This document shows, in pieces, positions 462-63,929 of a DNA stretch of 64,000 nt. Numbering within the stretch: the first letter of the stretch is position 1; each line of letters opens with the position of its first letter. The notes beneath the pieces are model-generated. The model saw nothing but the letters and a program-made list of their open reading frames with translations, was not told the origin of the DNA and did not search any database. The stretch lies in IMG/VR virus record IMGVR_UViG_3300032236_001613, positions 186,001 through 250,000 of that record; one strand, given 5' to 3'. The translations under genes were made by a program, and so were the position numbers.

Positions 462-1180
462 ATTATAATATAATTCTTGTAATGATTTACTAATTCAATT
501 CTTGTTTTTAAATCAGTTGAAGGCCAATGTATTAACCAATCTCCAAATTGCCAATTTCCGTCAAATCCTAAGCGATCCCTTTGATCAGTATAATGATATA
601 ATTGATAATTAAATGAATTCATGTATCTTTGGGGAACTATTTTAACGATATTTTTATACTCCTCATTAATTTTAAGATCTGTATTTTTTTCAATAAATTG
701 CCATGCAGGATCCGTAGTTCCAGGAATTCCTAACATAGTAGCAATGCATTTTTGCTCTGTATCCCAAAATTTTAAAAAAGCTGGCTCTAGATGAATAATT
801 GTATCTAAAAAATTTAAACTTTCTGGGGAATTTTTAATTAATAAACTATCGGCGTTAACTCCATTAACATCGACTGCTATAATAAAATGGTGATCTTTTG
901 AAATTCTATCTTCAATTTTAATTGAAAAATTAGTGATCATCGAATCTGTCCCTGACCACCAAATCCACTCATACTCAGGATGTTCTCTCAAAATGTCTCT
1001 AGCAAAATGTATCTTTTCGAATCCGGTCATTAAAGAGCCGTTTCTAGATGTGGCAAAATTTGAATCTCTTGCATGTACTGCATATCCATGATATTTTGCA
1101 TACTCTACTTTATTCTGTTCCCACGTCAAATCAGCTAAAGGTTTATATCCAATATCGTGATGAGTAATTAATGCATACAT
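458..1180 (-). CDS. GT34 (GMA12/MNN10)-like glycosyltransferase
   Basis: NKVEYAKYHGY, EWIWWSGTDSMITN, DVNGVNADS, GDWLIHW; ATG at 1180 is a more likely start than 1213. Confidence 0.75.
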   Translation of the reverse strand: MYALITHHDIGYKPLADLTWEQNKVEYAKYHGYAVHARDSNFATSRNGSLMTGFEKIHFARDILREHPEYEWIWWSGTDSMITNFSIKIEDRISKDHHFIIAVDVNGVNADSLLIKNSPESLNFLDTIIHLEPAFLKFWDTEQKCIATMLGIPGTTDPAWQFIEKNTDLKINEEYKNIVKIVPQRYMNSFNYQLYHYTDQRDRLGFDGNWQFGDWLIHWPSTDLKTRIELVNHYKNYIII

Positions 1181-1995
1181 TAGAAATAAAACCCGTTTAT
1201 TCTTGGAAACCAAGTATCTCCGTATCCACCGTGTGGAGTTTTAGTTTGTTCGTAGTTTGAAATAATTTCACACCAATATGTTTTACCTAACCCTATAGCT
1301 ACGCTTAATGCAACACTTTGATTTCCGATAAATTGTTCGCATCCTTGTACATATCGAGCCATTTCTAATAAATCGTTAGTTTTCTGATATTGTATTTTAA
1401 TCTTAAAAAAATCTTCAAACTTAGAATGTTCTTCTTCCGTTCCTAAGAAAACTGCATAATCACCTAGCCCGTTATTAATCCATTCCTCCCATCCAGTTAC
1501 TTGTTGATCTCTTCCGTAAAGATATCTTTCCGTCCTGTTAACCACAATAGGCTTTCCAGATACACGTAATGGAGAAACTGGAGTCAACCAAGGTTCGTAT
1601 AACAATTTCCTTTTGATATCAATATTATGAATGTTTAATCCTTGTGTTAATGCGTAACATTCTGTCTGATTACCTTGCCAGCCTTTAATCAAATGGTATT
1701 TCCAATGGTCGCTAAAATCGTAATCAAACGTTTCACCGTTCCATACAGCGACTTTTTCTATATAATCTTGTGCTTCTAATAAAGGAGCTAATATATTATA
1801 ATCGTGTTGTGTTAATCTTCCAGATGCAGGACCGGCGTTTGGCCAACCTAACACGTTTTTTGCGTAATCGTCAAGAGCGTCAAGTTTCACATACATATTA
1901 CCGCCGCCTAACAGTTTTACTAAACATAAGCTGTAGATAGTATCACCAAAAGTGCCTAACGTATAAAAATTATTTACTTTCATTATTATTCCCAA
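1180..1995 (-). CDS. GT9/heptosyltransferase-like glycosyltransferase
   Basis: N-terminal GTFGDTIYSL and C-terminal LLEMARYVQGCEQFIGNQSVALSVAIGLGK. Confidence 0.6.
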   Translation of the reverse strand: MGIIMKVNNFYTLGTFGDTIYSLCLVKLLGGGNMYVKLDALDDYAKNVLGWPNAGPASGRLTQHDYNILAPLLEAQDYIEKVAVWNGETFDYDFSDHWKYHLIKGWQGNQTECYALTQGLNIHNIDIKRKLLYEPWLTPVSPLRVSGKPIVVNRTERYLYGRDQQVTGWEEWINNGLGDYAVFLGTEEEHSKFEDFFKIKIQYQKTNDLLEMARYVQGCEQFIGNQSVALSVAIGLGKTYWCEIISNYEQTKTPHGGYGDTWFPRINGFYF

Positions 1996-2052
1996 TTGAG
2001 GTTATATTGTAAACTATTTAATTAAGACTTACAAGCGAGAATAATATTTTGA

Positions 2053-2865
2053 TTAAGTTAATATTGTTCTATGAAACGCACTATCATAGTGATAAACACC
2101 AGGACGTCTATACCCTTTCCGAATCTTATCCCATAACCAGTTTAAATCATTTTGAATTTTTTCAAAATCAGGATCTCCAGGAAACGGCCATCTTTCTTTA
2201 TTGCAGATAGTAATACAGTTTGGATTAGTAACTATTCGAAAACCGACCTGACTAATTTTTTGACCTAACCATCCAGGAACGACTCTAGACGACCATTCCA
2301 TATCGTAAGGATCGGTGTGATACATTGACTCATCTAATGGTTCATACAACATCACATGCTTTTTACAAACCCAATACCCGCCGTCGAGACACATATAAGG
2401 AACAAAGCAATCAATGTCTCTGGGAATAGGTGTACACATTGGAATTTCTGGATATCCTGGAATTTGATTAAAACCTAATCTCCACCCATTACCATCAGCA
2501 TATTTGGTTTTTCCAAAAGATTTAGCTCGATTTCTATGTACACAAATATCCCAATCAATACCGAATTTTTCAAATTCAGTGTACCAATTACTATCAAATA
2601 AAACATAATCATGCATTACTACACAAACATCGTAACAGCTAGAAAAAACACCTTGATTCTTTTTTCTAGTTGTCCACGGCTTTTCTGTTATTGATTCATC
2701 AAAAGGAATATGAATGGTATTTTTTCTTTTAATGTTGTTTTTTAATCCGCCAATTAATAATATTTCATATTCTGGAATATTATTTGCTTCGATACTATCA
2801 ATAACTTGCTCAACACCTTCATCATTTGTGCCTGATGTAGTAATAACAAAAGAAATGCCTGTCAT
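2053..2865 (-). CDS. GT-A fold (GT2-like) glycosyltransferase
   Basis: ISFVITT start, KKNQGV, VVMHDYVLFD. Confidence 0.6.
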   Translation of the reverse strand: MTGISFVITTSGTNDEGVEQVIDSIEANNIPEYEILLIGGLKNNIKRKNTIHIPFDESITEKPWTTRKKNQGVFSSCYDVCVVMHDYVLFDSNWYTEFEKFGIDWDICVHRNRAKSFGKTKYADGNGWRLGFNQIPGYPEIPMCTPIPRDIDCFVPYMCLDGGYWVCKKHVMLYEPLDESMYHTDPYDMEWSSRVVPGWLGQKISQVGFRIVTNPNCITICNKERWPFPGDPDFEKIQNDLNWLWDKIRKGYRRPGVYHYDSAFHRTILT

Positions 2866-2903
2866 AATTCACCTTTATAAATAAAACTTCAAGGATATTT
2901 ATA

Positions 2904-4031
2904 ATGTCTAATCACGGTCTAAAATATTTTACTCGAGAAAACTGTTTAATAAACAATAATGAAAAAATCGAAGATATATACTCATTTAAAAAGTTTCCAA
3001 TTTTTATAAATTGTACCAGTGATGAAGATAACTTAAACGATCAATTTTATGATATGAACTGGGGTATCTCTGAATCAGGACATTTACAATTGATAGACTT
3101 GTTAAACCCTACACTAATTTATTCTAACTATCACACTACCGGAGTAGTTGGTAAAATTTGGGATAATCACCATAAAAAAATATTCGATTTTATAAATCAA
3201 GATAATTTTAATAGTGTTTTAGAAATTGGCGGCGCTAGCGGTAAGCTGGTAAAACATTTTTGTAATCTTAATAGAGAATTTAATTGGTCAATTATTGAAC
3301 CTTCGATCAAATTGTCAACCATTGATCATCGAGTGACATGCATATCGGCATTTTTTGAAGATTATTCTTTTAATAAAAAGTTTGATACAATAGTGCATTC
3401 TCATTGCTTAGAACATGTATACAATCCTATTGTTTTTCTTAATAAAGTACACTCTTTACTTAACGACAATGGATACCAATATATTTCTATACCTAATATG
3501 AAATATGGATTAGAAAATAACTTTACTAATACTTTAAGTTTTGAGCATACTTTTTATATTGATGAATTTGTTTTAGAGTACTTACTAAATAAAACAGGGT
3601 TTATAGTTGTAGACAAAATAGTAGAAAACCATTCGATTTTTGTTAAAGCTAAAAAACAGAATAAATTGAATATATTACAAAAGGACTTTTTGTATATTAA
3701 AGAACTATTTTACAAATATATGTCTAATTTAAACAATGATGTTGTTACAATTAATTCAAAAATTAAGGATCAAAACTTTTATTTGTTCGGCGCACATATG
3801 TTTTCTTTATTATTATTAAATCTCGGATTGTACAACAAGAATATTGAATGTATTCTAGATAACGATACACAAAAGCAAAATAAAAGATTATATGGTACAC
3901 CGTATTTTGTAAAATCTATAGATTGTTTGAAAAATAAAGAATCACCTATTGTTGTTTTAAGAGCTGGAATTTATACTGATGAAATTAAAGAATCGATAGC
4001 AAAAGTCAATTCAACAACAATTTTTATATAA
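2904..4031 (+). CDS. Class I SAM-dependent (sugar C-methyltransferase-like) methyltransferase
   Basis: VLEIGGASG, FDTIVHSHCLEHV, FEH, C-terminal LFGA/ILDND domain. Confidence 0.8.
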   Translation: MSNHGLKYFTRENCLINNNEKIEDIYSFKKFPIFINCTSDEDNLNDQFYDMNWGISESGHLQLIDLLNPTLIYSNYHTTGVVGKIWDNHHKKIFDFINQDNFNSVLEIGGASGKLVKHFCNLNREFNWSIIEPSIKLSTIDHRVTCISAFFEDYSFNKKFDTIVHSHCLEHVYNPIVFLNKVHSLLNDNGYQYISIPNMKYGLENNFTNTLSFEHTFYIDEFVLEYLLNKTGFIVVDKIVENHSIFVKAKKQNKLNILQKDFLYIKELFYKYMSNLNNDVVTINSKIKDQNFYLFGAHMFSLLLLNLGLYNKNIECILDNDTQKQNKRLYGTPYFVKSIDCLKNKESPIVVLRAGIYTDEIKESIAKVNSTTIFI

Positions 4032-4040
4032 GGAAATACA

Positions 4041-5087
4041 ATGATTATTTGGGTAAATTGTAAAATAACAGACGTTCCATTAAATTCTTCCCCGTTGCGA
4101 TTTAATCTTAGAAAAGAAAGTAGATTTGATATAGCTCGGTATACTTTTGCTAGTTACGCAGCATTAGATTCATTAACAAGTAAAATCATTTTTAATTTAG
4201 AACTTGGAAACGAATTTTTAAATCGCAAAGAAGAAATGGAAAATTGGATAAAAAGTTTGTTTCCGCCGGAAAAATTGTCTATTTCGTGGTACAGATGCAA
4301 TAATCTAACACAATGGAAAGAAGTGCAAACAGTAATTAACAATATAAACGACGATCTTTTATATCTTGCAGGAAATGACGATCATGTTTTTTTTGATAAT
4401 AGTTTAGATTTATATAAAAAAGGATTAAACATATTAGATAACGATCCTGACGAAGATACCGCTCTAGTAAATTGTCATTATCCTGAAAGTTTAAGAGAAG
4501 CATTAAATCATCCTGAGCATCAGCTAACCGATTGTAAAAATTTTGTAAGTATAATACATCGACATTCGATTGGAATCGTTGTTATTAAAAAAGCACTATA
4601 TAATAGATTTTTATCTAAGGTAACAGACCCTGATAAAATAATGTTTCGTATGGATGATTGGCAAATAGACGGATACACAAAAATTTTTATCCCAACAAAA
4701 GAAATAAGCAAACACTTCGATGGGTACTCCCATGTAAATATCGATCCAAATGTTTGCCCTCCATTAGAAATCCCGCCTGGGTTTTTTGAAAAGAATGTAA
4801 CTATTAGATACGGGTTTGACGACTACGATCCGGAATGTGTAAATATTAATCCATTATCAACTAATTTACATGCTATCGATCCTAACGGAGCTGATTATAA
4901 ATTTTGTTTAAACGATATCCCTATTTTTTGGAGACCATTTATTAAACGTATAGTAATAGCTACTGAGTTAGATTCTCAAAAAATGTTCAAAGCTCGTAAT
5001 CAGCATTATATTGATTTAAGTTCGCCTGTGTTTTTTGGAAAAAAAATAGAGATTCCTCAGGTATGGATTGAAAATCATTTAGTGTAA
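4041..5087 (+). CDS. Hypothetical, possibly GT-A-like protein
   Basis: YLAGNDDHVF motif and glycan-cluster context. Confidence 0.4.
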   Translation: MIIWVNCKITDVPLNSSPLRFNLRKESRFDIARYTFASYAALDSLTSKIIFNLELGNEFLNRKEEMENWIKSLFPPEKLSISWYRCNNLTQWKEVQTVINNINDDLLYLAGNDDHVFFDNSLDLYKKGLNILDNDPDEDTALVNCHYPESLREALNHPEHQLTDCKNFVSIIHRHSIGIVVIKKALYNRFLSKVTDPDKIMFRMDDWQIDGYTKIFIPTKEISKHFDGYSHVNIDPNVCPPLEIPPGFFEKNVTIRYGFDDYDPECVNINPLSTNLHAIDPNGADYKFCLNDIPIFWRPFIKRIVIATELDSQKMFKARNQHYIDLSSPVFFGKKIEIPQVWIENHLV

Positions 5088-13735: not shown

Positions 13736-14278
13736 ATGCTTAGTAAAAATATTAGTTCAGAGACAATCGAAAAATTAATTGATTCAGGTTTAAAAACCTC
13801 AGAAATTGCATCTAAGCTCGGTATCTCTACTGCAACAGTTTCTTATTGGAAAAAGAAACTCGGAAAAGAACTTAGTAATATCAAACATGATTGGAAAAAA
13901 ATTCAAGAAGCCCACAACAATGGGTCTACTTATTCTCAATTATACAAAGAGTTTGGTGTTACTAAAAGATCATTACAGAAAGCTAGAGATCGAGGAGATT
14001 TCAAGGTTAGACAGCGTAAAAAATTGTCAAAAGATGACGCTAAAATTAGAAAAAGAATTATATGCAGAGAAGCGTGGATGCGGTATTATAGTAGAAAAAA
14101 ATATCAAACTCCGGCTGATGAAGATATTAAAAAATTACAAGAATTTTATGCTAATTGCCCGGTTGGTTATGAAGTAGATCACATCATACCTATAAGTAAA
14201 GGCGGATTACATACATTGTCGAATCTTCAATACTTAACTATTAAAGAGAATAGACAAAAAGGTAATAAGATATTATAA
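13736..14278 (+). CDS. HTH-HNH homing endonuclease
   Basis: N-terminal SEIASKLGISTATVSYW; YEVDHIIPISKGGLHTLSNLQYLTIKENRQK. Confidence 0.88.
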   Translation: MLSKNISSETIEKLIDSGLKTSEIASKLGISTATVSYWKKKLGKELSNIKHDWKKIQEAHNNGSTYSQLYKEFGVTKRSLQKARDRGDFKVRQRKKLSKDDAKIRKRIICREAWMRYYSRKKYQTPADEDIKKLQEFYANCPVGYEVDHIIPISKGGLHTLSNLQYLTIKENRQKGNKIL

Positions 14279-60457: not shown

Positions 60458-60510
60458 TAATTGACTTGTTAGTGTAGATCTCATATAGTATCTCTACAAG
60501 GAGAATAATA

Positions 60511-60786
60511 ATGAGTAAAGTATTCGGCGACCCAGAAAAACAAAAGCTTAAGCAAATTGTTTCTGAGGGTGTTACTGTTAAACAGGAAATTCAAGTGCTT
60601 ACAGAAGGTCTTAATGATACTATTAAGTCTATCGCAGAAGAGCTTGATATTTCGGCTGGCGAAATTAAGCAGGCAATCAATATTGCCCTCAAAGGAAATT
60701 GGGATCAAGTTTGGAAGAAGTTCGATACTATCGAAACTATTCTTGATATTACTGGTCATGCAGTCCGAAAGGAGGACGAGGTATGA
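60511..60786 (+). CDS. Small putative DNA-binding protein (T4 DsbA-like)
   Basis: Size and helical pattern; promoter 60461-60489. Confidence 0.45.
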   Translation: MSKVFGDPEKQKLKQIVSEGVTVKQEIQVLTEGLNDTIKSIAEELDISAGEIKQAINIALKGNWDQVWKKFDTIETILDITGHAVRKEDEV

Positions 60787-61142
60787 GTGATTATTGGGGA
60801 TATCATCTAATGCTTGATTGTTCGGGGTGTAATGATAATATTAAAGACCGTGAACAAATTTATCAATTCGCTAAGGAAATGGTAAAACGCATCGATATGA
60901 TTGCGCATGGCGAGCCTATTATCGAATACATGCTGCCTGGAGATCCTAAGGAAGGGTACAGTTTAATGCAGTTGATTCAAACTAGCAATATTTGTGCACA
61001 CTTTGTTAATCCTGACAATACAGCTTATATTGACATTTTTAGTTGCAAGGAATACGACATCGAGACTGCCAAGGCCGTAGTTGCAGAGTTTTTCGCTCCT
61101 ACTAAGGTTCGTGTTAATTTTATTACACGACACGCTAATTAA
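60783..61142 (+). CDS. speD: S-adenosylmethionine decarboxylase proenzyme-like
   Basis: GYHLMLD, GYS..QLIQTSNICAH, YIDIFSC. Confidence 0.8.
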   Translation: MSDYWGYHLMLDCSGCNDNIKDREQIYQFAKEMVKRIDMIAHGEPIIEYMLPGDPKEGYSLMQLIQTSNICAHFVNPDNTAYIDIFSCKEYDIETAKAVVAEFFAPTKVRVNFITRHAN

Positions 61143-61165
61143 ATAAATATTATTAGAACATGGTT

Positions 61166-61220
61166 TGGCCAGCCATAAATGGCCATTTAGACGGTCTGTG
61201 AGCCATAAATCACAAGGAGA
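61166..61220 (+). promoter_or_regulatory. Twin-hairpin translational operator candidate
   Basis: Two different stems with the identical loop GCCATAAA; the second abuts AGGAG. Confidence 0.65.
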
Positions 61221-61226
61221 AAAAAT

Positions 61227-63929
61227 ATGAGTTACGTCGATTCCATGTGGGATCGCGAAAACGATATCGTAAATGTCGTTGAACGTGATCCTGTAAAAGG
61301 AAGAATATTCCAACAATATCCAGCAAAGTATTTGTTTTATTACCCAGATGTTAAGGGTAAGCATAATAGTATATTTGGCACACCTTTAAGTAAGGTTACA
61401 TCAAGAAGTTATAAAGAACACATGAAAGAGCAAAGGATCCATAGTGGTCGTAAGCTCTTTGAAAGCGATATTAATCCAGTATTTCGATGTCTGGAAGAAA
61501 ATTATTTAGGAAAAGATGCTCCTAAATTAAACGTAGCATTTTTCGATATTGAGGTTGATTTTGATCCCGAAAGAGGTTATGCAACCCCTGATGATGCATT
61601 CATGCCAATCACTGCAATTGCAGTACATTTACAGTGGTTAGATACTTTGATATGTCTAGCTGTTCCTCCTAAGACATTAACTATGGAACAAGCTCTCGAA
61701 CAGGTAAAAGATTTTCCTAATACCATTTTGTTCCAAAATGAGTACGAGCTACTTGATACATTTTTAACTCTCATCGAAGATGCAGATGTATTGAGCGGGT
61801 GGAATTCCGAAGGATTCGATATTCCATATACTGTCAATCGAGTAATTAAAGCTCTTAGTAAAGAAGATACTAGAAGGTTTTGTCTTTGGAATCAATTTCC
61901 AAAAAGACGAGAGTACGAAAAGTATGGAAAAACTTCAGTAACTTACGATATTATAGGTCGTGTTCATCTCGACAGTCTGGCTTTATATAGAAAGTATACA
62001 TATGAAGAACGCCATAGCTGGAAGCTTGATTCAGTTGCTGAAGATGAACTTGGTGAGCGTAAAACACAGTACGAAGGTACACTTGACCAATTGTATAACA
62101 ATGATTTTAAAACATTTATTGAGTACAATAGACAAGACTGCGCAATCTTAGAAAAACTCGATAAAAAATTAAAGTTTATTGACTTAGCTAACACAATTGC
62201 ACATGAAAATACTGTGCTACTTCAAACTACAATGGGCGCCGTTGCTGTTACCGAACAAGCTATTATTAATGAGGCACATAGTTTAGGGTTGATTGTTCCT
62301 AGTCGTACTAAACAAGATGACAAGGACATTACCGACGACGATGATGGTCCATCAGATACACAAGCAGCAGGTGCTTATGTAGCATATCCTAAAAAAGGAT
62401 TACATGATTGGATTGGATCAATGGACATTAACAGTCTGTATCCATCTGTTATTCGTGCTTTAAATATGGGTCCCGAGACAATTATCGGTCAGCTAAGACA
62501 AGAATATACTAAGGCAGAAATTTCTGCTAAAATGGCAAAAGGATCTAGTTTTGCTGCTTCTTGGGAAGGCAAGTTTGGAAGTAATGAGTTCGAACTTGTT
62601 ATGTCTAAAGACATTGCACAAGACATAACTGTCGATTGGGAAGATGGCAAAAGCGATGTACTAACCGGTGCACAGATTTATTCTTTAATCTACGAAAATA
62701 ATAATCCTTGGCTGTTAAGTGCAAATGGTACTATTTTTACTGTAGAGAAGGAAGGAATTATTCCTGGCTTGCTAGCACGTTGGTATAAAGAGCGTAAAGA
62801 ACTTCAAAAGAAATTAAAAGCAGCAATTGAAGCAGGAAATAAAGTCGAAGAAGAGTACTGGGATAAAAGACAGCTAGTTAAGAAAATTAACTTAAACAGT
62901 CTTTACGGTGCAATTCTTAATCCTGGTTGCAGATTTTTTGATAATCGAATTGGGCAGTCAACAACATTAACTGGTCGTCGAATTGCTAGACATATGGCAT
63001 CAAAAATTAATGAAATTATTACCGGCGAATATAATCATGTCGGTAAAGCTATCATTTACGGCGATACTGACTCTGCATACTTTAGTGCTTACAGTACGTT
63101 AAGAAATGAAATCAATAAAGGAGTTATTCCTTGGGATAAGGATACTGTAATTCAACTTTATAATACTGTAGCTGAAGAAGTTAACAACACATTTCCTCAA
63201 TTCATGTTAGATGACTTTCATTGCCCTAAGAAGCGTGGTGAAGTTATTAAAGCAGGACGAGAAATCGTTGCTATTAAAGGACTGTTTATTACTAAAAAAC
63301 GATACGCTGTTCTTTATTATGATAAAGATGGTAAACGTCAAGACCTTGGTGGAAAGCCTGGTAAAATTAAAGCCATGGGCCTAGATCTTAAAAGAAGCGA
63401 CACACCAGAATTCATGCAAGAGTTCCTTAGCGAAATTCTAAATAAAGTACTCAACGGTGCAGGTGAGGATGAGATTTTAGAAAGGATTTCTGTCTTTAGA
63501 ACTGAATTTAAATCACGTCCAGGTTGGGAAAAAGGCAGCCCTAAAAGAGCAAATAACATTACCGATTATCAATCGAGAGAAGAAAAAGCCGGTAAAATTA
63601 ATATGCCAGGACATGTTAGAGCAAGTATTAATTGGAATACATTACGTAGAATGAACGATGACAAATATTCATTACAAATCGTTGATGGTATGAAAGTTAT
63701 TGTTTGCAAACTCATTGATAATCCAATGGGGTTTACTAGCGTGGCGTATCCAACGGACGAACAAAGACTACCAAAATGGTTTCAAGAGCTACCTTTCGCT
63801 CATTCAGAGATGGAAGGTGTCATTATTAACAATAAGCTAGAAAATCTTATCGGAGTTCTTGAATGGGATTTGAACTCAACTAAACAGGACTCAACATTTG
63901 GAAGTTTATTTTCGTTTGGATCAGAATAA
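61227..63929 (+). CDS. Family B DNA polymerase
   Basis: FDIE, GWNSEGFD, DINSLYPS, KINLNSLYG, YGDTDS, KKRY. Confidence 0.98.
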   Translation: MSYVDSMWDRENDIVNVVERDPVKGRIFQQYPAKYLFYYPDVKGKHNSIFGTPLSKVTSRSYKEHMKEQRIHSGRKLFESDINPVFRCLEENYLGKDAPKLNVAFFDIEVDFDPERGYATPDDAFMPITAIAVHLQWLDTLICLAVPPKTLTMEQALEQVKDFPNTILFQNEYELLDTFLTLIEDADVLSGWNSEGFDIPYTVNRVIKALSKEDTRRFCLWNQFPKRREYEKYGKTSVTYDIIGRVHLDSLALYRKYTYEERHSWKLDSVAEDELGERKTQYEGTLDQLYNNDFKTFIEYNRQDCAILEKLDKKLKFIDLANTIAHENTVLLQTTMGAVAVTEQAIINEAHSLGLIVPSRTKQDDKDITDDDDGPSDTQAAGAYVAYPKKGLHDWIGSMDINSLYPSVIRALNMGPETIIGQLRQEYTKAEISAKMAKGSSFAASWEGKFGSNEFELVMSKDIAQDITVDWEDGKSDVLTGAQIYSLIYENNNPWLLSANGTIFTVEKEGIIPGLLARWYKERKELQKKLKAAIEAGNKVEEEYWDKRQLVKKINLNSLYGAILNPGCRFFDNRIGQSTTLTGRRIARHMASKINEIITGEYNHVGKAIIYGDTDSAYFSAYSTLRNEINKGVIPWDKDTVIQLYNTVAEEVNNTFPQFMLDDFHCPKKRGEVIKAGREIVAIKGLFITKKRYAVLYYDKDGKRQDLGGKPGKIKAMGLDLKRSDTPEFMQEFLSEILNKVLNGAGEDEILERISVFRTEFKSRPGWEKGSPKRANNITDYQSREEKAGKINMPGHVRASINWNTLRRMNDDKYSLQIVDGMKVIVCKLIDNPMGFTSVAYPTDEQRLPKWFQELPFAHSEMEGVIINNKLENLIGVLEWDLNSTKQDSTFGSLFSFGSE

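What the first reader, a model, noticed from the sequence alone, without database searches (positions are those of the whole stretch)
61166..61226. Twin hairpins with identical 8-nt loops at the DNA polymerase ribosome-binding site
Seen: TGGCCA-GCCATAAA-TGGCCA and TGTGA-GCCATAAA-TCACA, different stems with the same loop, the second touching AGGAG. Known: T4 gp43 represses its own translation through a single hairpin with an 8-nt loop next to the SD. Inference: a duplicated autogenous operator.
Basis: partly seen in the sequence, partly recalled or inferred. Interest (0 to 1): 0.6.

Follow-up and report, generated by a model that had tools for sequence, protein, structure and literature searches.

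The report
Twin pseudoknot leader of phage polymerase
The two look-alike hairpins in front of this jumbo phage's DNA polymerase gene are real, conserved in hundreds of related phages and only there. Each is probably a tiny pseudoknot, and together they most likely form a switch on the mRNA that limits how much polymerase is made.

Summary
Two hairpins, TGGCCA/GCCATAAA/TGGCCA and TGTGA/GCCATAAA/TCACA, lie between a promoter-like ATAAATA and the AGGAG ribosome-binding site of a 900-aa family-B DNA polymerase in a 328-kb uncultivated jumbo phage.

The same arrangement sits in front of the polymerase gene in all 159 loci of the first two protein-led scans and in most of a third, more distant set. 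Both stems covary heavily (88% of cells paired, 194 double changes, 0 of 500 shuffles as high). A conserved GGU 5-8 nt upstream of each loop pairs with the loop's GCC, with compensatory AGU:GCU and GGA:UCC variants. Each unit is therefore probably a ~25-nt H-type pseudoknot rather than an open 8-nt loop.

The element is single-copy in six large genomes, keeps its place although at least 12 unrelated genes lie upstream, and abuts the Shine-Dalgarno sequence. A motif-only scan of IMG/VR gave 78 of 79 hits directly before polB; the same pattern in bacterial genomes gave only chance hits. Rfam has no match and there is no sequence likeness to the T4 gp43 operator.

Best reading: a translational operator, most likely autogenous as in T4, RB69 and RB49. 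Binding by the polymerase was not tested.

The parts
61143..61149 (+). ATAAATA, promoter-like motif. It resembles the T4 late -10 element TATAAATA (own knowledge). The predicted transcript start is about 61155.
   Evidence: ATAAATA is the most enriched 7-mer in upstream regions of this genome: 34 of 148 regions, 22-fold. In 22 genes it lies 4-8 nt before the ATG and in others 17-30 nt; here it lies 77 nt before. An AAATA block is conserved at >=70% in alignment A1. The transcript start is inferred, not measured.
61162..61185 (+). Module 1: GGU (61162-61164), linker U (61165), stem 5' strand UGGCCA (61166-61171), GCC (61172-61174) pairing with the GGU, A-rich loop AUAAA (61175-61179), stem 3' strand UGGCCA (61180-61185).
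   Evidence: The four core stem pairs are paired in 63 of 63 distinct sequences, with 2-3 pair types each. GGU:GCC is 94% paired, with AGU:GCU (3 sequences) and GGC:GCC / GGU:ACC variants. A GGA:UCC variant occurs in the L302 group.
61186..61192 (+). Variable linker between the two modules.
   Evidence: Not conserved in sequence and variable in length in A1.
61193..61214 (+). Module 2: GGU (61193-61195), linker C (61196), stem 5' strand UGUGA (61197-61201), GCC (61202-61204), loop AUAAA (61205-61209), stem 3' strand UCACA (61210-61214).
   Evidence: Helix 2 is 95% paired and all 5 pairs show double changes. There are 15 G-U pairs, which fit only the + strand. A complementary triplet lies 5, 6 or 8 nt upstream of the loop in 101 of 103 distinct sequences.
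61215..61219 (+). Shine-Dalgarno sequence AGGAG, directly abutting module 2.
   Evidence: The SD core starts -2 to +3 nt from the stem end in almost all of 143 distinct sequences. The stem end lies 9-13 nt from the start codon.
61227..63929 (+). Family-B (T4 gp43-like) DNA polymerase gene, 900 aa.
   Evidence: PF00136 and PF03104; phrog_262, 8e-187; 27% identity to T4 gp43; 50% to Sinorhizobium phage Phosso.
60783..61142 (+). Upstream gene, S-adenosylmethionine decarboxylase-like. Context only, not part of the element.
   Evidence: PF02675 and phrog_3125. This gene lies upstream of pol in only 4 of 158 loci; at least 12 unrelated genes take this position elsewhere.

Best explanation
The ~72-nt leader of the DNA polymerase mRNA carries two tandem copies of a small structured module. 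Each module reads GGU, 0-3 nt, a 4-8 bp variable stem, GCC, AYAAR, then the stem's return strand. Each probably folds as an H-type pseudoknot: a fixed 3-bp helix GGU:GCC, a freely covarying second helix, and an A-rich loop lying across the fixed helix.

The 3' module ends 0-3 nt before the Shine-Dalgarno sequence. I propose that it is a translational operator. A protein recognises the invariant GGU:GCC/A-rich face and, once bound to the 3' module, sterically keeps the 30S subunit off the ribosome-binding site. That protein is most likely the polymerase itself when it is not engaged on DNA, as in T4, RB69 and RB49. The 5' module would add a second or cooperative binding site.

**Shown:** the structure, its conservation and covariation, its fit to the mRNA strand only, its position next to the SD, its single-copy status and its exclusive link to polB.

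**Inferred:** that it acts on translation (about 0.7), that each unit is a pseudoknot (about 0.75), and that the polymerase is the ligand (about 0.45).
For: 1. **Real, conserved structure.** In 63 distinct leaders 88% of cells are paired, with 194 double-change cells and 0 of 500 shuffles as high. Slid controls give 22-40% paired. RNAalifold finds both hairpins on its own.
2. **RNA, sense strand.** The stems contain G-U pairs (15 in one pair of helix 2; U.G in GGU:GCC). These would be A.C mismatches on the other strand.
3. **Pseudoknot.** A triplet complementary to loop nt 1-3 sits at a fixed short distance in about 98% of modules. Variants keep the pairing: GGC:GCC, GGU:ACC, AGU:GCU and GGA:UCC.
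4. **Gene-specific.** The covariance model finds one strong hit in each of six genomes of 164-353 kb (52-93 bits); the next best hits have E > 0.5. Simple loop-and-stem hits elsewhere in the genome equal the chance expectation.
5. **Travels with polB.** At least 12 unrelated upstream genes are seen, yet the intergenic distance mostly stays 67-86 nt. A motif-only scan of IMG/VR gave 78 of 79 hits directly in front of polB homologs of 53-84% identity.
6. **Tied to an initiation site.** Module 2 abuts the SD. In L062, L166, L222 and L243 the element instead precedes a short leader ORF. In L062 that ORF's stop overlaps the pol ATG as ATGA.
7. **Unusually long leader.** Other ATAAATA-associated genes in this genome have the motif 4-30 nt before the ATG.
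8. **Precedent.** T4, RB69 and RB49 polymerases repress their own translation through a hairpin at the RBS. The loop AA/AC bases matter there (PMC3014915; sequences read). The only invariant loop bases here, besides CC, include an AA, usually as YAA.
9. **Polymerase clefts accept pseudoknots.** Small RNA pseudoknots are known high-affinity ligands of a polymerase template-primer cleft (HIV-1 RT aptamers, PMC2588506).
10. **No RegA.** No RegA homolog is found in the genome; the positive control on T4 works.
Against: - No binding or expression data exist.
- There is no sequence similarity to the T4/RB69 operator. The review states there is no evidence of a pseudoknot in the gene 43 operator.
- T4-type polymerases act as monomers (own knowledge), so two sites are not obviously needed.
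- Nearly identical polymerases occur with a single module (L330) and with none (L331). Nearer named relatives (Phosso, Atu_ph07) lack the element. The polymerase therefore does not depend on it.
- The fixed GGU:GCC helix rests on few independent compensatory events, about two. A conserved helix with an A-rich loop is also what a small-molecule aptamer would look like.
Confidence: 0.5

Rival explanations
1. The element is a translational operator, but it is bound by another phage or host RNA-binding protein rather than by the polymerase. A dimer that contacts both modules is one possibility.
For: Two equivalent modules suit a dimeric binder (own knowledge: the E. coli thrS operator has two anticodon-like arms bound by dimeric ThrRS). 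Nearly identical polymerases exist with and without the element. All the structural and positional evidence fits this reading equally well.
Against: A regulator that controls exactly one gene in a 328-kb genome is less economical than autogenous control. There is one strong covariance-model hit per genome. No RegA homolog is present. No candidate gene is linked to the element: upstream neighbours vary freely. Downstream neighbours were not examined.
Confidence: 0.2
2. The element is a tandem small-molecule riboswitch. Each mini-pseudoknot would be an aptamer, for a nucleotide or other metabolite relevant to replication, and ligand-stabilised folding next to the SD would tune translation.
For: The module is a compact H-type pseudoknot with a fixed helix, an A-rich loop and a free second helix. 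It sits next to an SD and occurs in tandem. This resembles the small pseudoknot riboswitches and the two-hairpin guanidine-II arrangement (own knowledge). The fixed GGU:GCC identity suggests recognition beyond pairing.
Against: No Rfam 15 family matches, even at E <= 10. The SD is not part of either helix and no anti-SD segment is conserved. L1 length (0-3 nt) and stem length (4-8 bp) vary, which is unusual for a tight pocket. The motif is absent from the bacterial and archaeal rows inspected: 0 of 80 pattern hits had stems. It is confined to one gene of one phage clade.
Confidence: 0.1
3. The element is a protein-independent cis structure. It could be a 5'-terminal fold that protects the mRNA from decay, a standby or enhancer site for the 30S subunit, or a put-like RNA that modifies the transcribing RNA polymerase.
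For: If ATAAATA is the promoter, the modules start about 8 nt from the 5' end of the transcript. That is the right place for a stabiliser or a put-like element. HK022 put RNAs are twin stem-loops just downstream of promoters (own knowledge).
Against: A stabiliser or antiterminator needs neither the near-invariant GGU/GCC/AA bases nor tight abutment to the SD (-2 to +3 nt), which is kept even when a leader ORF intervenes. The pol RBS is already strong (AGGAG, 7-nt spacing). The single-module forms keep the SD-proximal unit.
Confidence: 0.12
4. The hairpins are a chance pair, a terminator of the upstream gene, or a DNA-level site such as a palindromic operator or an origin.
For: TGGCCA is a palindrome. 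The single-sequence fold is not significant (z -0.65). HP1 follows the stop codon of the upstream gene.
Against: The element is conserved with covariation in more than 250 loci. No terminator-like site was found and there is no U-run. It is independent of which gene lies upstream. The G-U pairs fit one strand only. In most relatives the stems are not palindromes.
Confidence: 0.03

Closest known systems
Autogenous translational operator of T4 / RB69 / RB49 DNA polymerase (gene 43)
   Same: It lies in the leader of a homologous family-B polymerase gene. It is a short stem (4-6 bp) closing 8 nt, next to the Shine-Dalgarno sequence. It is single-copy and gene-specific. The loop contains an essential-looking AA, usually YAA: T4 has UAAC and RB49 has UAAA.
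   Different: There are two units instead of one. The loop sequence is unrelated (GCCAYAAR versus AAUAACUC). The first three loop bases probably pair with an upstream GGU to form a pseudoknot, which is not known for gene 43. The structure abuts the SD, whereas T4 has 8 nt between them and in RB49 the stem contains the SD. The polymerases share only 27% identity. Binding was not tested.
T4 gene 32 (and E. coli rpsO / rplT) pseudoknot operators
   Same: All are autogenously regulated mRNAs whose operator includes an H-type pseudoknot in the leader. The L20 operator has two binding sites (PMC3014915; PMC1888825, listed).
   Different: The genes and binding proteins differ. The gene 32 pseudoknot lies well upstream, and repression spreads along unstructured RNA. 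Here two tiny (~25 nt) identical-type pseudoknots lie directly at the SD.
SELEX pseudoknot aptamers against HIV-1 reverse transcriptase
   Same: These are small RNA pseudoknots that bind in the template-primer cleft of a polymerase (PMC2588506). From my own recollection, not checked here, they have a conserved first helix, an A-rich loop and a covarying second helix, which is the same logic as in this motif.
   Different: They are artificial, target an unrelated polymerase family and share no sequence. This is an analogy for plausibility only.
Guanidine-II (mini-ykkC) and preQ1-I riboswitches
   Same: Guanidine-II has two tandem hairpins with the same conserved loop, the second at the SD. PreQ1-I is a minimal H-type pseudoknot with an A-rich loop at the SD. 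Both descriptions are from own knowledge.
   Different: There is no Rfam match. The loop sequences differ (ACGR tetraloop; preQ1 core). The SD is not sequestered. The motif is restricted to phages and to one gene.

Membership tests
T4-type gp43 translational operator | Lies in the 5' leader of the phage's family-B DNA polymerase gene, at or overlapping the ribosome-binding site | tested here: met
   The element lies at 61162-61214, the SD at 61215-61219 and the pol ATG at 61227. The same holds in relatives.
T4-type gp43 translational operator | A single, non-pseudoknotted hairpin (T4: 5-bp stem, 8-nt loop) | tested here: not met
   Two units are present in nearly all members. The loop's GCC pairs with the upstream GGU. 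Stem and loop sizes do resemble those of T4.
T4-type gp43 translational operator | Loop carrying the UAAC (T4, RB69) or UAAA (RB49) determinant | tested here: inconclusive
   The window loops read GCCAUAAA and so contain UAAA. Across the clade only AA is invariant, and the base before it is U or C in module 1 but any base in module 2. Four bases carry too little information to show homology.
T4-type gp43 translational operator | Bound by its own polymerase, with repression of translation | not testable with these tools
   Needs gel shift, toeprinting or reporter assays. Complex prediction takes no RNA.
H-type RNA pseudoknot | Two interleaved helices, each supported by covariation | tested here: met
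   The variable helix is very strongly supported. For the GGU:GCC helix, 94% of cells are paired. Single-side changes keep the pairing in about 40 modules, and there are two compensatory variants, AGU:GCU and GGA:UCC. Support for the short helix is moderate, and no structure probing exists.
Any described RNA family (Rfam 15, including preQ1, guanidine-II and other riboswitches) | Match to the family covariance model | tested here: not met
   cmscan of 60500-61800 at E <= 10 gave no hit over the element.
Intrinsic transcription terminator | G+C-rich hairpin followed by a U-run | tested here: not met
   The scan found 0 terminator-like sites in 60700-61400. HP1 is followed by UUUAGAC.

The most novel reading that the evidence does not exclude
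The twin modules may be the first natural pseudoknot ligands of a replicative family-B DNA polymerase. That would make them an operator class that evolved independently of the T4 hairpin, and a natural counterpart of the SELEX pseudoknots that plug a polymerase's template-primer cleft. More radically, they could be a tandem riboswitch that lets a virus set its polymerase level by sensing a small molecule such as a nucleotide.
Probability: 0.45. Interest if true: 0.75.

Novelty: new variant of a known kind. Interest (0 to 1): 0.62.

Why it matters
Autogenous translational control of a replicative DNA polymerase is known experimentally only from T4 and a few close relatives, and it was the system on which SELEX was invented. 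This finding shows a differently built, much better conserved leader element on the homologous gene, in a large clade of uncultivated jumbo phages (more than 250 contigs from many samples).

If the polymerase binds it, this kind of feedback is widespread, and it has been reinvented or remodelled with a tandem pseudoknot architecture. The motif is small (~25 nt per unit), modular and richly sampled by natural variation. That makes binding, structural and synthetic-biology tests direct. It is also a candidate new RNA family and a sequence marker for this phage clade.

Tried and rejected
- **DNA similarity to named phages:** blastn of the region against 50,697 phage records found nothing. Relatives had to be reached through the protein.
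- **Single-sequence folding:** not significant (z -0.65), so the case rests on comparison.
- **Rfam 15:** no match.
- **Terminator and sigma-70 promoter scans:** no terminator and no convincing promoter.
- **Other copies in the genome:** regex hits equal chance. The covariance model finds only the pol site in the phage's own genome and in five other large relatives.
- **RegA-type repressor:** none in the genome; the T4 positive control works.
- **Bacterial or archaeal occurrence:** 80 listed pattern hits, none with stems.
- **Nearer named relatives:** Phosso and Atu_ph07 have no such element.
- **L062 as an exception:** rejected. The element is there, followed by a leader ORF.
- **Cross-module pairing (loop 1 with the GGU between the hairpins):** disfavoured, because the GGA:UCC variant changes the upstream triplet only.
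- **treekit tree:** the run was killed by the sandbox. A smaller FastTree run was used instead.
- **Literature:** Petrov & Karam 2002 (PMC137073) is not held. No paper describing this motif was found.

Full report
**1. What is in the window**

The window is bases 186001-250000 of a 328-kb IMG/VR virus record, estimated 92% complete. The ORF at 61227-63929 encodes a 900-aa family-B DNA polymerase, supported by several searches:
- It matches PF00136 and PF03104 and phrog_262 at 8e-187.
- It is 27% identical to T4 gp43 over 716 residues, E 2e-54.
- Its best named relatives are jumbo phages: Sinorhizobium phage Phosso at 50%, Agrobacterium phage Atu_ph07 at 45%, and the 121Q/GAP32 group at about 44%.

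The gene upstream (60783-61142) is S-adenosylmethionine decarboxylase-like.

- TGGCCA-GCCATAAA-TGGCCA at 61166-61185
- TGTGA-GCCATAAA-TCACA at 61197-61214
- AGGAG at 61215-61219
- ATG at 61227

RNAfold returns these two hairpins as the centroid. The fold of this one sequence is no better than that of shuffled sequence (z -0.65). The 8-mer occurs twice in the window, both times here.

**2. Conservation**

DNA search against named phages finds nothing. The polymerase protein, however, retrieves hundreds of IMG/VR contigs.

The first two protein-led scans gave 159 loci with polymerases 74-87% identical to their queries. All of them carry the same arrangement. L062 at first looked like an exception, but it has the element 120 nt further upstream (see section 5).

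An alignment of 63 distinct leaders (A1) was tested with the two-hairpin structure:
- 88% of cells are paired.
- All 11 pairs show a change on both sides, in 194 cells.
- The covariation score is 0.73, against 0.28 in shuffles (0 of 500 as high).
- With the 3' partners slid by 1-3 columns, only 22-40% of cells pair.

The four inner pairs of each stem are paired in essentially every sequence, with two to four pair types each. RNAalifold finds the same two helices unaided. One pair of the second helix is G-U in 15 sequences. On the complementary strand that would be an A.C mismatch, so the structure belongs to the mRNA strand.

**3. The '8-nt loop' is probably half of a pseudoknot**

The invariant bases are not spread over the loop. 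In module 1 they are G-C-C-A-Y-A-A-D and in module 2 G-C-C-N-N-A-A-R. Each hairpin is also preceded by a conserved GGU.

A triplet complementary to loop bases 1-3 lies 6-7 nt upstream of the loop in module 1 (100 of 103 distinct sequences). In module 2 it lies 5, 6 or 8 nt upstream (101 of 103).

The variants keep the pairing:
- GGC with GCC (U.G becomes C-G), in 18 modules of 103 distinct leaders by the strict parse and 34 of 143 by a looser one
- GGU with ACC (U-A), in 6 modules
- AGU with GCU (G-C becomes A-U, a change on both sides), in L024, L070 and L073
- GGA with UCC (U.G becomes A-U, both sides), in a separate marine-type subclade of 9 loci

Mismatches are about 3 in 206 modules by the strict parse.

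In the GGA:UCC case only the triplet upstream of module 1 changed; the GGU between the hairpins did not. The pairing is therefore within a module.

The order GGU, stem 5' strand, GCC, AYAAR, stem 3' strand is an H-type pseudoknot. It has a fixed 3-bp helix, a variable 4-8 bp helix, a first loop of 0-3 nt, no nucleotide between the helices, and a 5-nt A-rich loop that would cross the minor groove of the fixed helix. That geometry is feasible (own knowledge).

The short helix rests on about two independent compensatory events. I rate the pseudoknot at about 0.75.

**4. Specificity for the polymerase gene**

- Within the 328-kb genome, hairpins with a GCCNNAAN loop and at least 4 bp number 9, against 4-12 in shuffles. 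Only the two at pol have the GGU and an SD.
- A covariance model of the twin element (R1) gives one hit of 81 bits (E 1e-18) in the phage's own genome; the next hit is 14 bits.
- The model gives exactly one strong hit in each of five other large relatives of 164-353 kb (52-93 bits; all others E > 0.5).
- The gene upstream of the element belongs to at least 12 unrelated families across loci, while the intergenic distance mostly stays 67-86 nt.
Of the 79 loci listed, 78 have the element directly before a polB homolog of 53-84% identity. The other one is a chance match without stems.
- The same pattern in 596 Gb of bacterial and archaeal genomes gave 80 listed hits, none with stems. This is both a negative control and evidence that the motif is not bacterial.

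**5. Link to translation initiation**

Across 143 distinct leaders, the stem of module 2 ends 9-13 nt before the start codon. The SD core begins -2 to +3 nt from the stem end.

In L062, L166, L222 and L243 the element precedes a short leader ORF instead of pol, and pol starts about 120-180 nt downstream of it. In L062 that ORF is 42 codons long and its stop overlaps the pol start as ATGA. The element thus stays with the first initiation site of the unit.

ATAAATA is the most enriched 7-mer upstream of genes in this genome: 34 of 148 regions, 22-fold. It lies 4-8 nt before the ATG of 22 genes and 17-30 nt before many others, but 77 nt before pol. If it is a T4-late-like -10 element (own knowledge of its geometry), the transcript starts near 61155 and module 1 begins about 8 nt from the 5' end. 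This is inference.

**6. Limits of the family**

A third protein-led scan started from a divergent member. Its leaders fall into three classes:
- twin elements, in most
- a single module next to the SD, in L329, L330, L333 and L334, preceded by a different hairpin
- no element, in several lineages

Phosso and Atu_ph07 have none.

On a FastTree of representative polymerases rooted with T4, the twin form lies on both sides of the basal ingroup split. Single and absent forms are interleaved in one subclade; L330 (single) and L331 (none) have nearly identical polymerases. The twin is therefore probably ancestral in this clade, and the single form is a reduction. Rooting on the long T4 branch and sparse sampling are caveats.

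**7. Mechanism**

The best-supported reading is a gene-specific translational operator. A ligand recognises the invariant GGU:GCC helix with its A-rich strand, and bound next to the SD it blocks the 30S subunit.

By analogy with T4, RB69 and RB49, the ligand is most likely the polymerase itself. In those phages gp43 binds a hairpin at its own RBS and the loop AA/AC bases matter (PMC3014915; sequences). Four further points fit this:
- The element is single-copy.
- No RegA homolog is present.
- The only invariant loop bases besides CC include an AA.
- Polymerase clefts are known to accept small pseudoknots (PMC2588506).

None of this shows binding. The rivals are:
- another protein, perhaps a dimer using both modules (0.2)
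- a tandem riboswitch (0.1)
- a protein-independent stabiliser, standby site or put-like element (0.12)
- chance, a terminator or a DNA site (0.03)

The comparative data effectively exclude the last of these.

**8. Comparison and novelty**

The element works like the gene 43 operator in position and probable logic, but it is not a member of that family. It has no sequence likeness, has two units, and is probably pseudoknotted; for gene 43 no pseudoknot is known.

It matches no Rfam 15 family, and I found no description in the searchable literature.

I class it as a new variant of a known kind, the autogenous-type leader operator of a phage replication gene. It is realised as a new, well-supported RNA motif.

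Noticed in passing
Whole genome G000. In-window examples: ATG at 13736 and 28910 (ATAAATA 4-5 nt upstream); 2904, 5134, 17432, 36835, 43800, 48597 (18-23 nt upstream): ATAAATA resembles the T4 late-promoter element and is the top enriched upstream 7-mer. In 22 genes it ends 4-8 nt (mode 5) before the ATG with no Shine-Dalgarno sequence. With T4-late geometry the transcript would then start at the AUG, giving a set of apparently leaderless mRNAs alongside SD-led ones. The gene starts came from a crude ORF caller.
   Followed up: partly
G000:C1 about 71000-80100, minus strand (outside the window): Thirteen near-identical sigma-70-like promoters of the form TTGACcttTTGGTAAAACCtgcTATAAT. Each is followed about 20 nt later by AAGGAG, and they are spaced 300-1800 nt apart. 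This looks like an early-gene cluster with a repeated strong promoter that carries a conserved spacer.
   Followed up: no
L062:1879-2004; also L166, L222, L243: In a few relatives a short leader ORF lies between the twin element and pol. In L062 it has 42 codons, contains several cysteines, and its stop overlaps the pol ATG as ATGA, which suggests translational coupling. Whether the leader ORFs of the four loci are related to one another was not checked.
   Followed up: partly
L329, L330, L333, L334 (about 40-70 nt upstream of the pol ATG): The single-module lineages carry another conserved structure in place of module 1: a hairpin GCC(C)...(G)GGC followed by AUGUA. The nearly identical polymerases of L331, L340 and L345 have neither module, but keep an AUGUA-like stretch and a long-range GUUUCC...GGAAAC complementarity.
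   Followed up: no
L362, L363, L364 (match 1001-4237): The polymerase match spans 3237 nt instead of about 2667 nt. This implies an insertion of roughly 570 nt in the gene, possibly an intein or a mobile endonuclease. It was not examined.
   Followed up: no
window 60783-61142: An S-adenosylmethionine decarboxylase-like gene lies directly upstream of pol. It is found in that position in only 4 of 158 loci. This is an auxiliary-metabolism-type gene in a jumbo phage.
   Followed up: no
window 60963-61364, minus strand: A 133-aa ORF on the opposite strand spans the whole element. The conservation pattern there is stem covariation, not codon-like, so the ORF is most likely spurious.
   Followed up: partly
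window 61172-61183: In this phage only, HP1 can also fold as GCCA-UAAA-UGGC, because its stem is TGGCCA. Relatives with other stems cannot do this, so the alternative fold is not conserved.
   Followed up: yes
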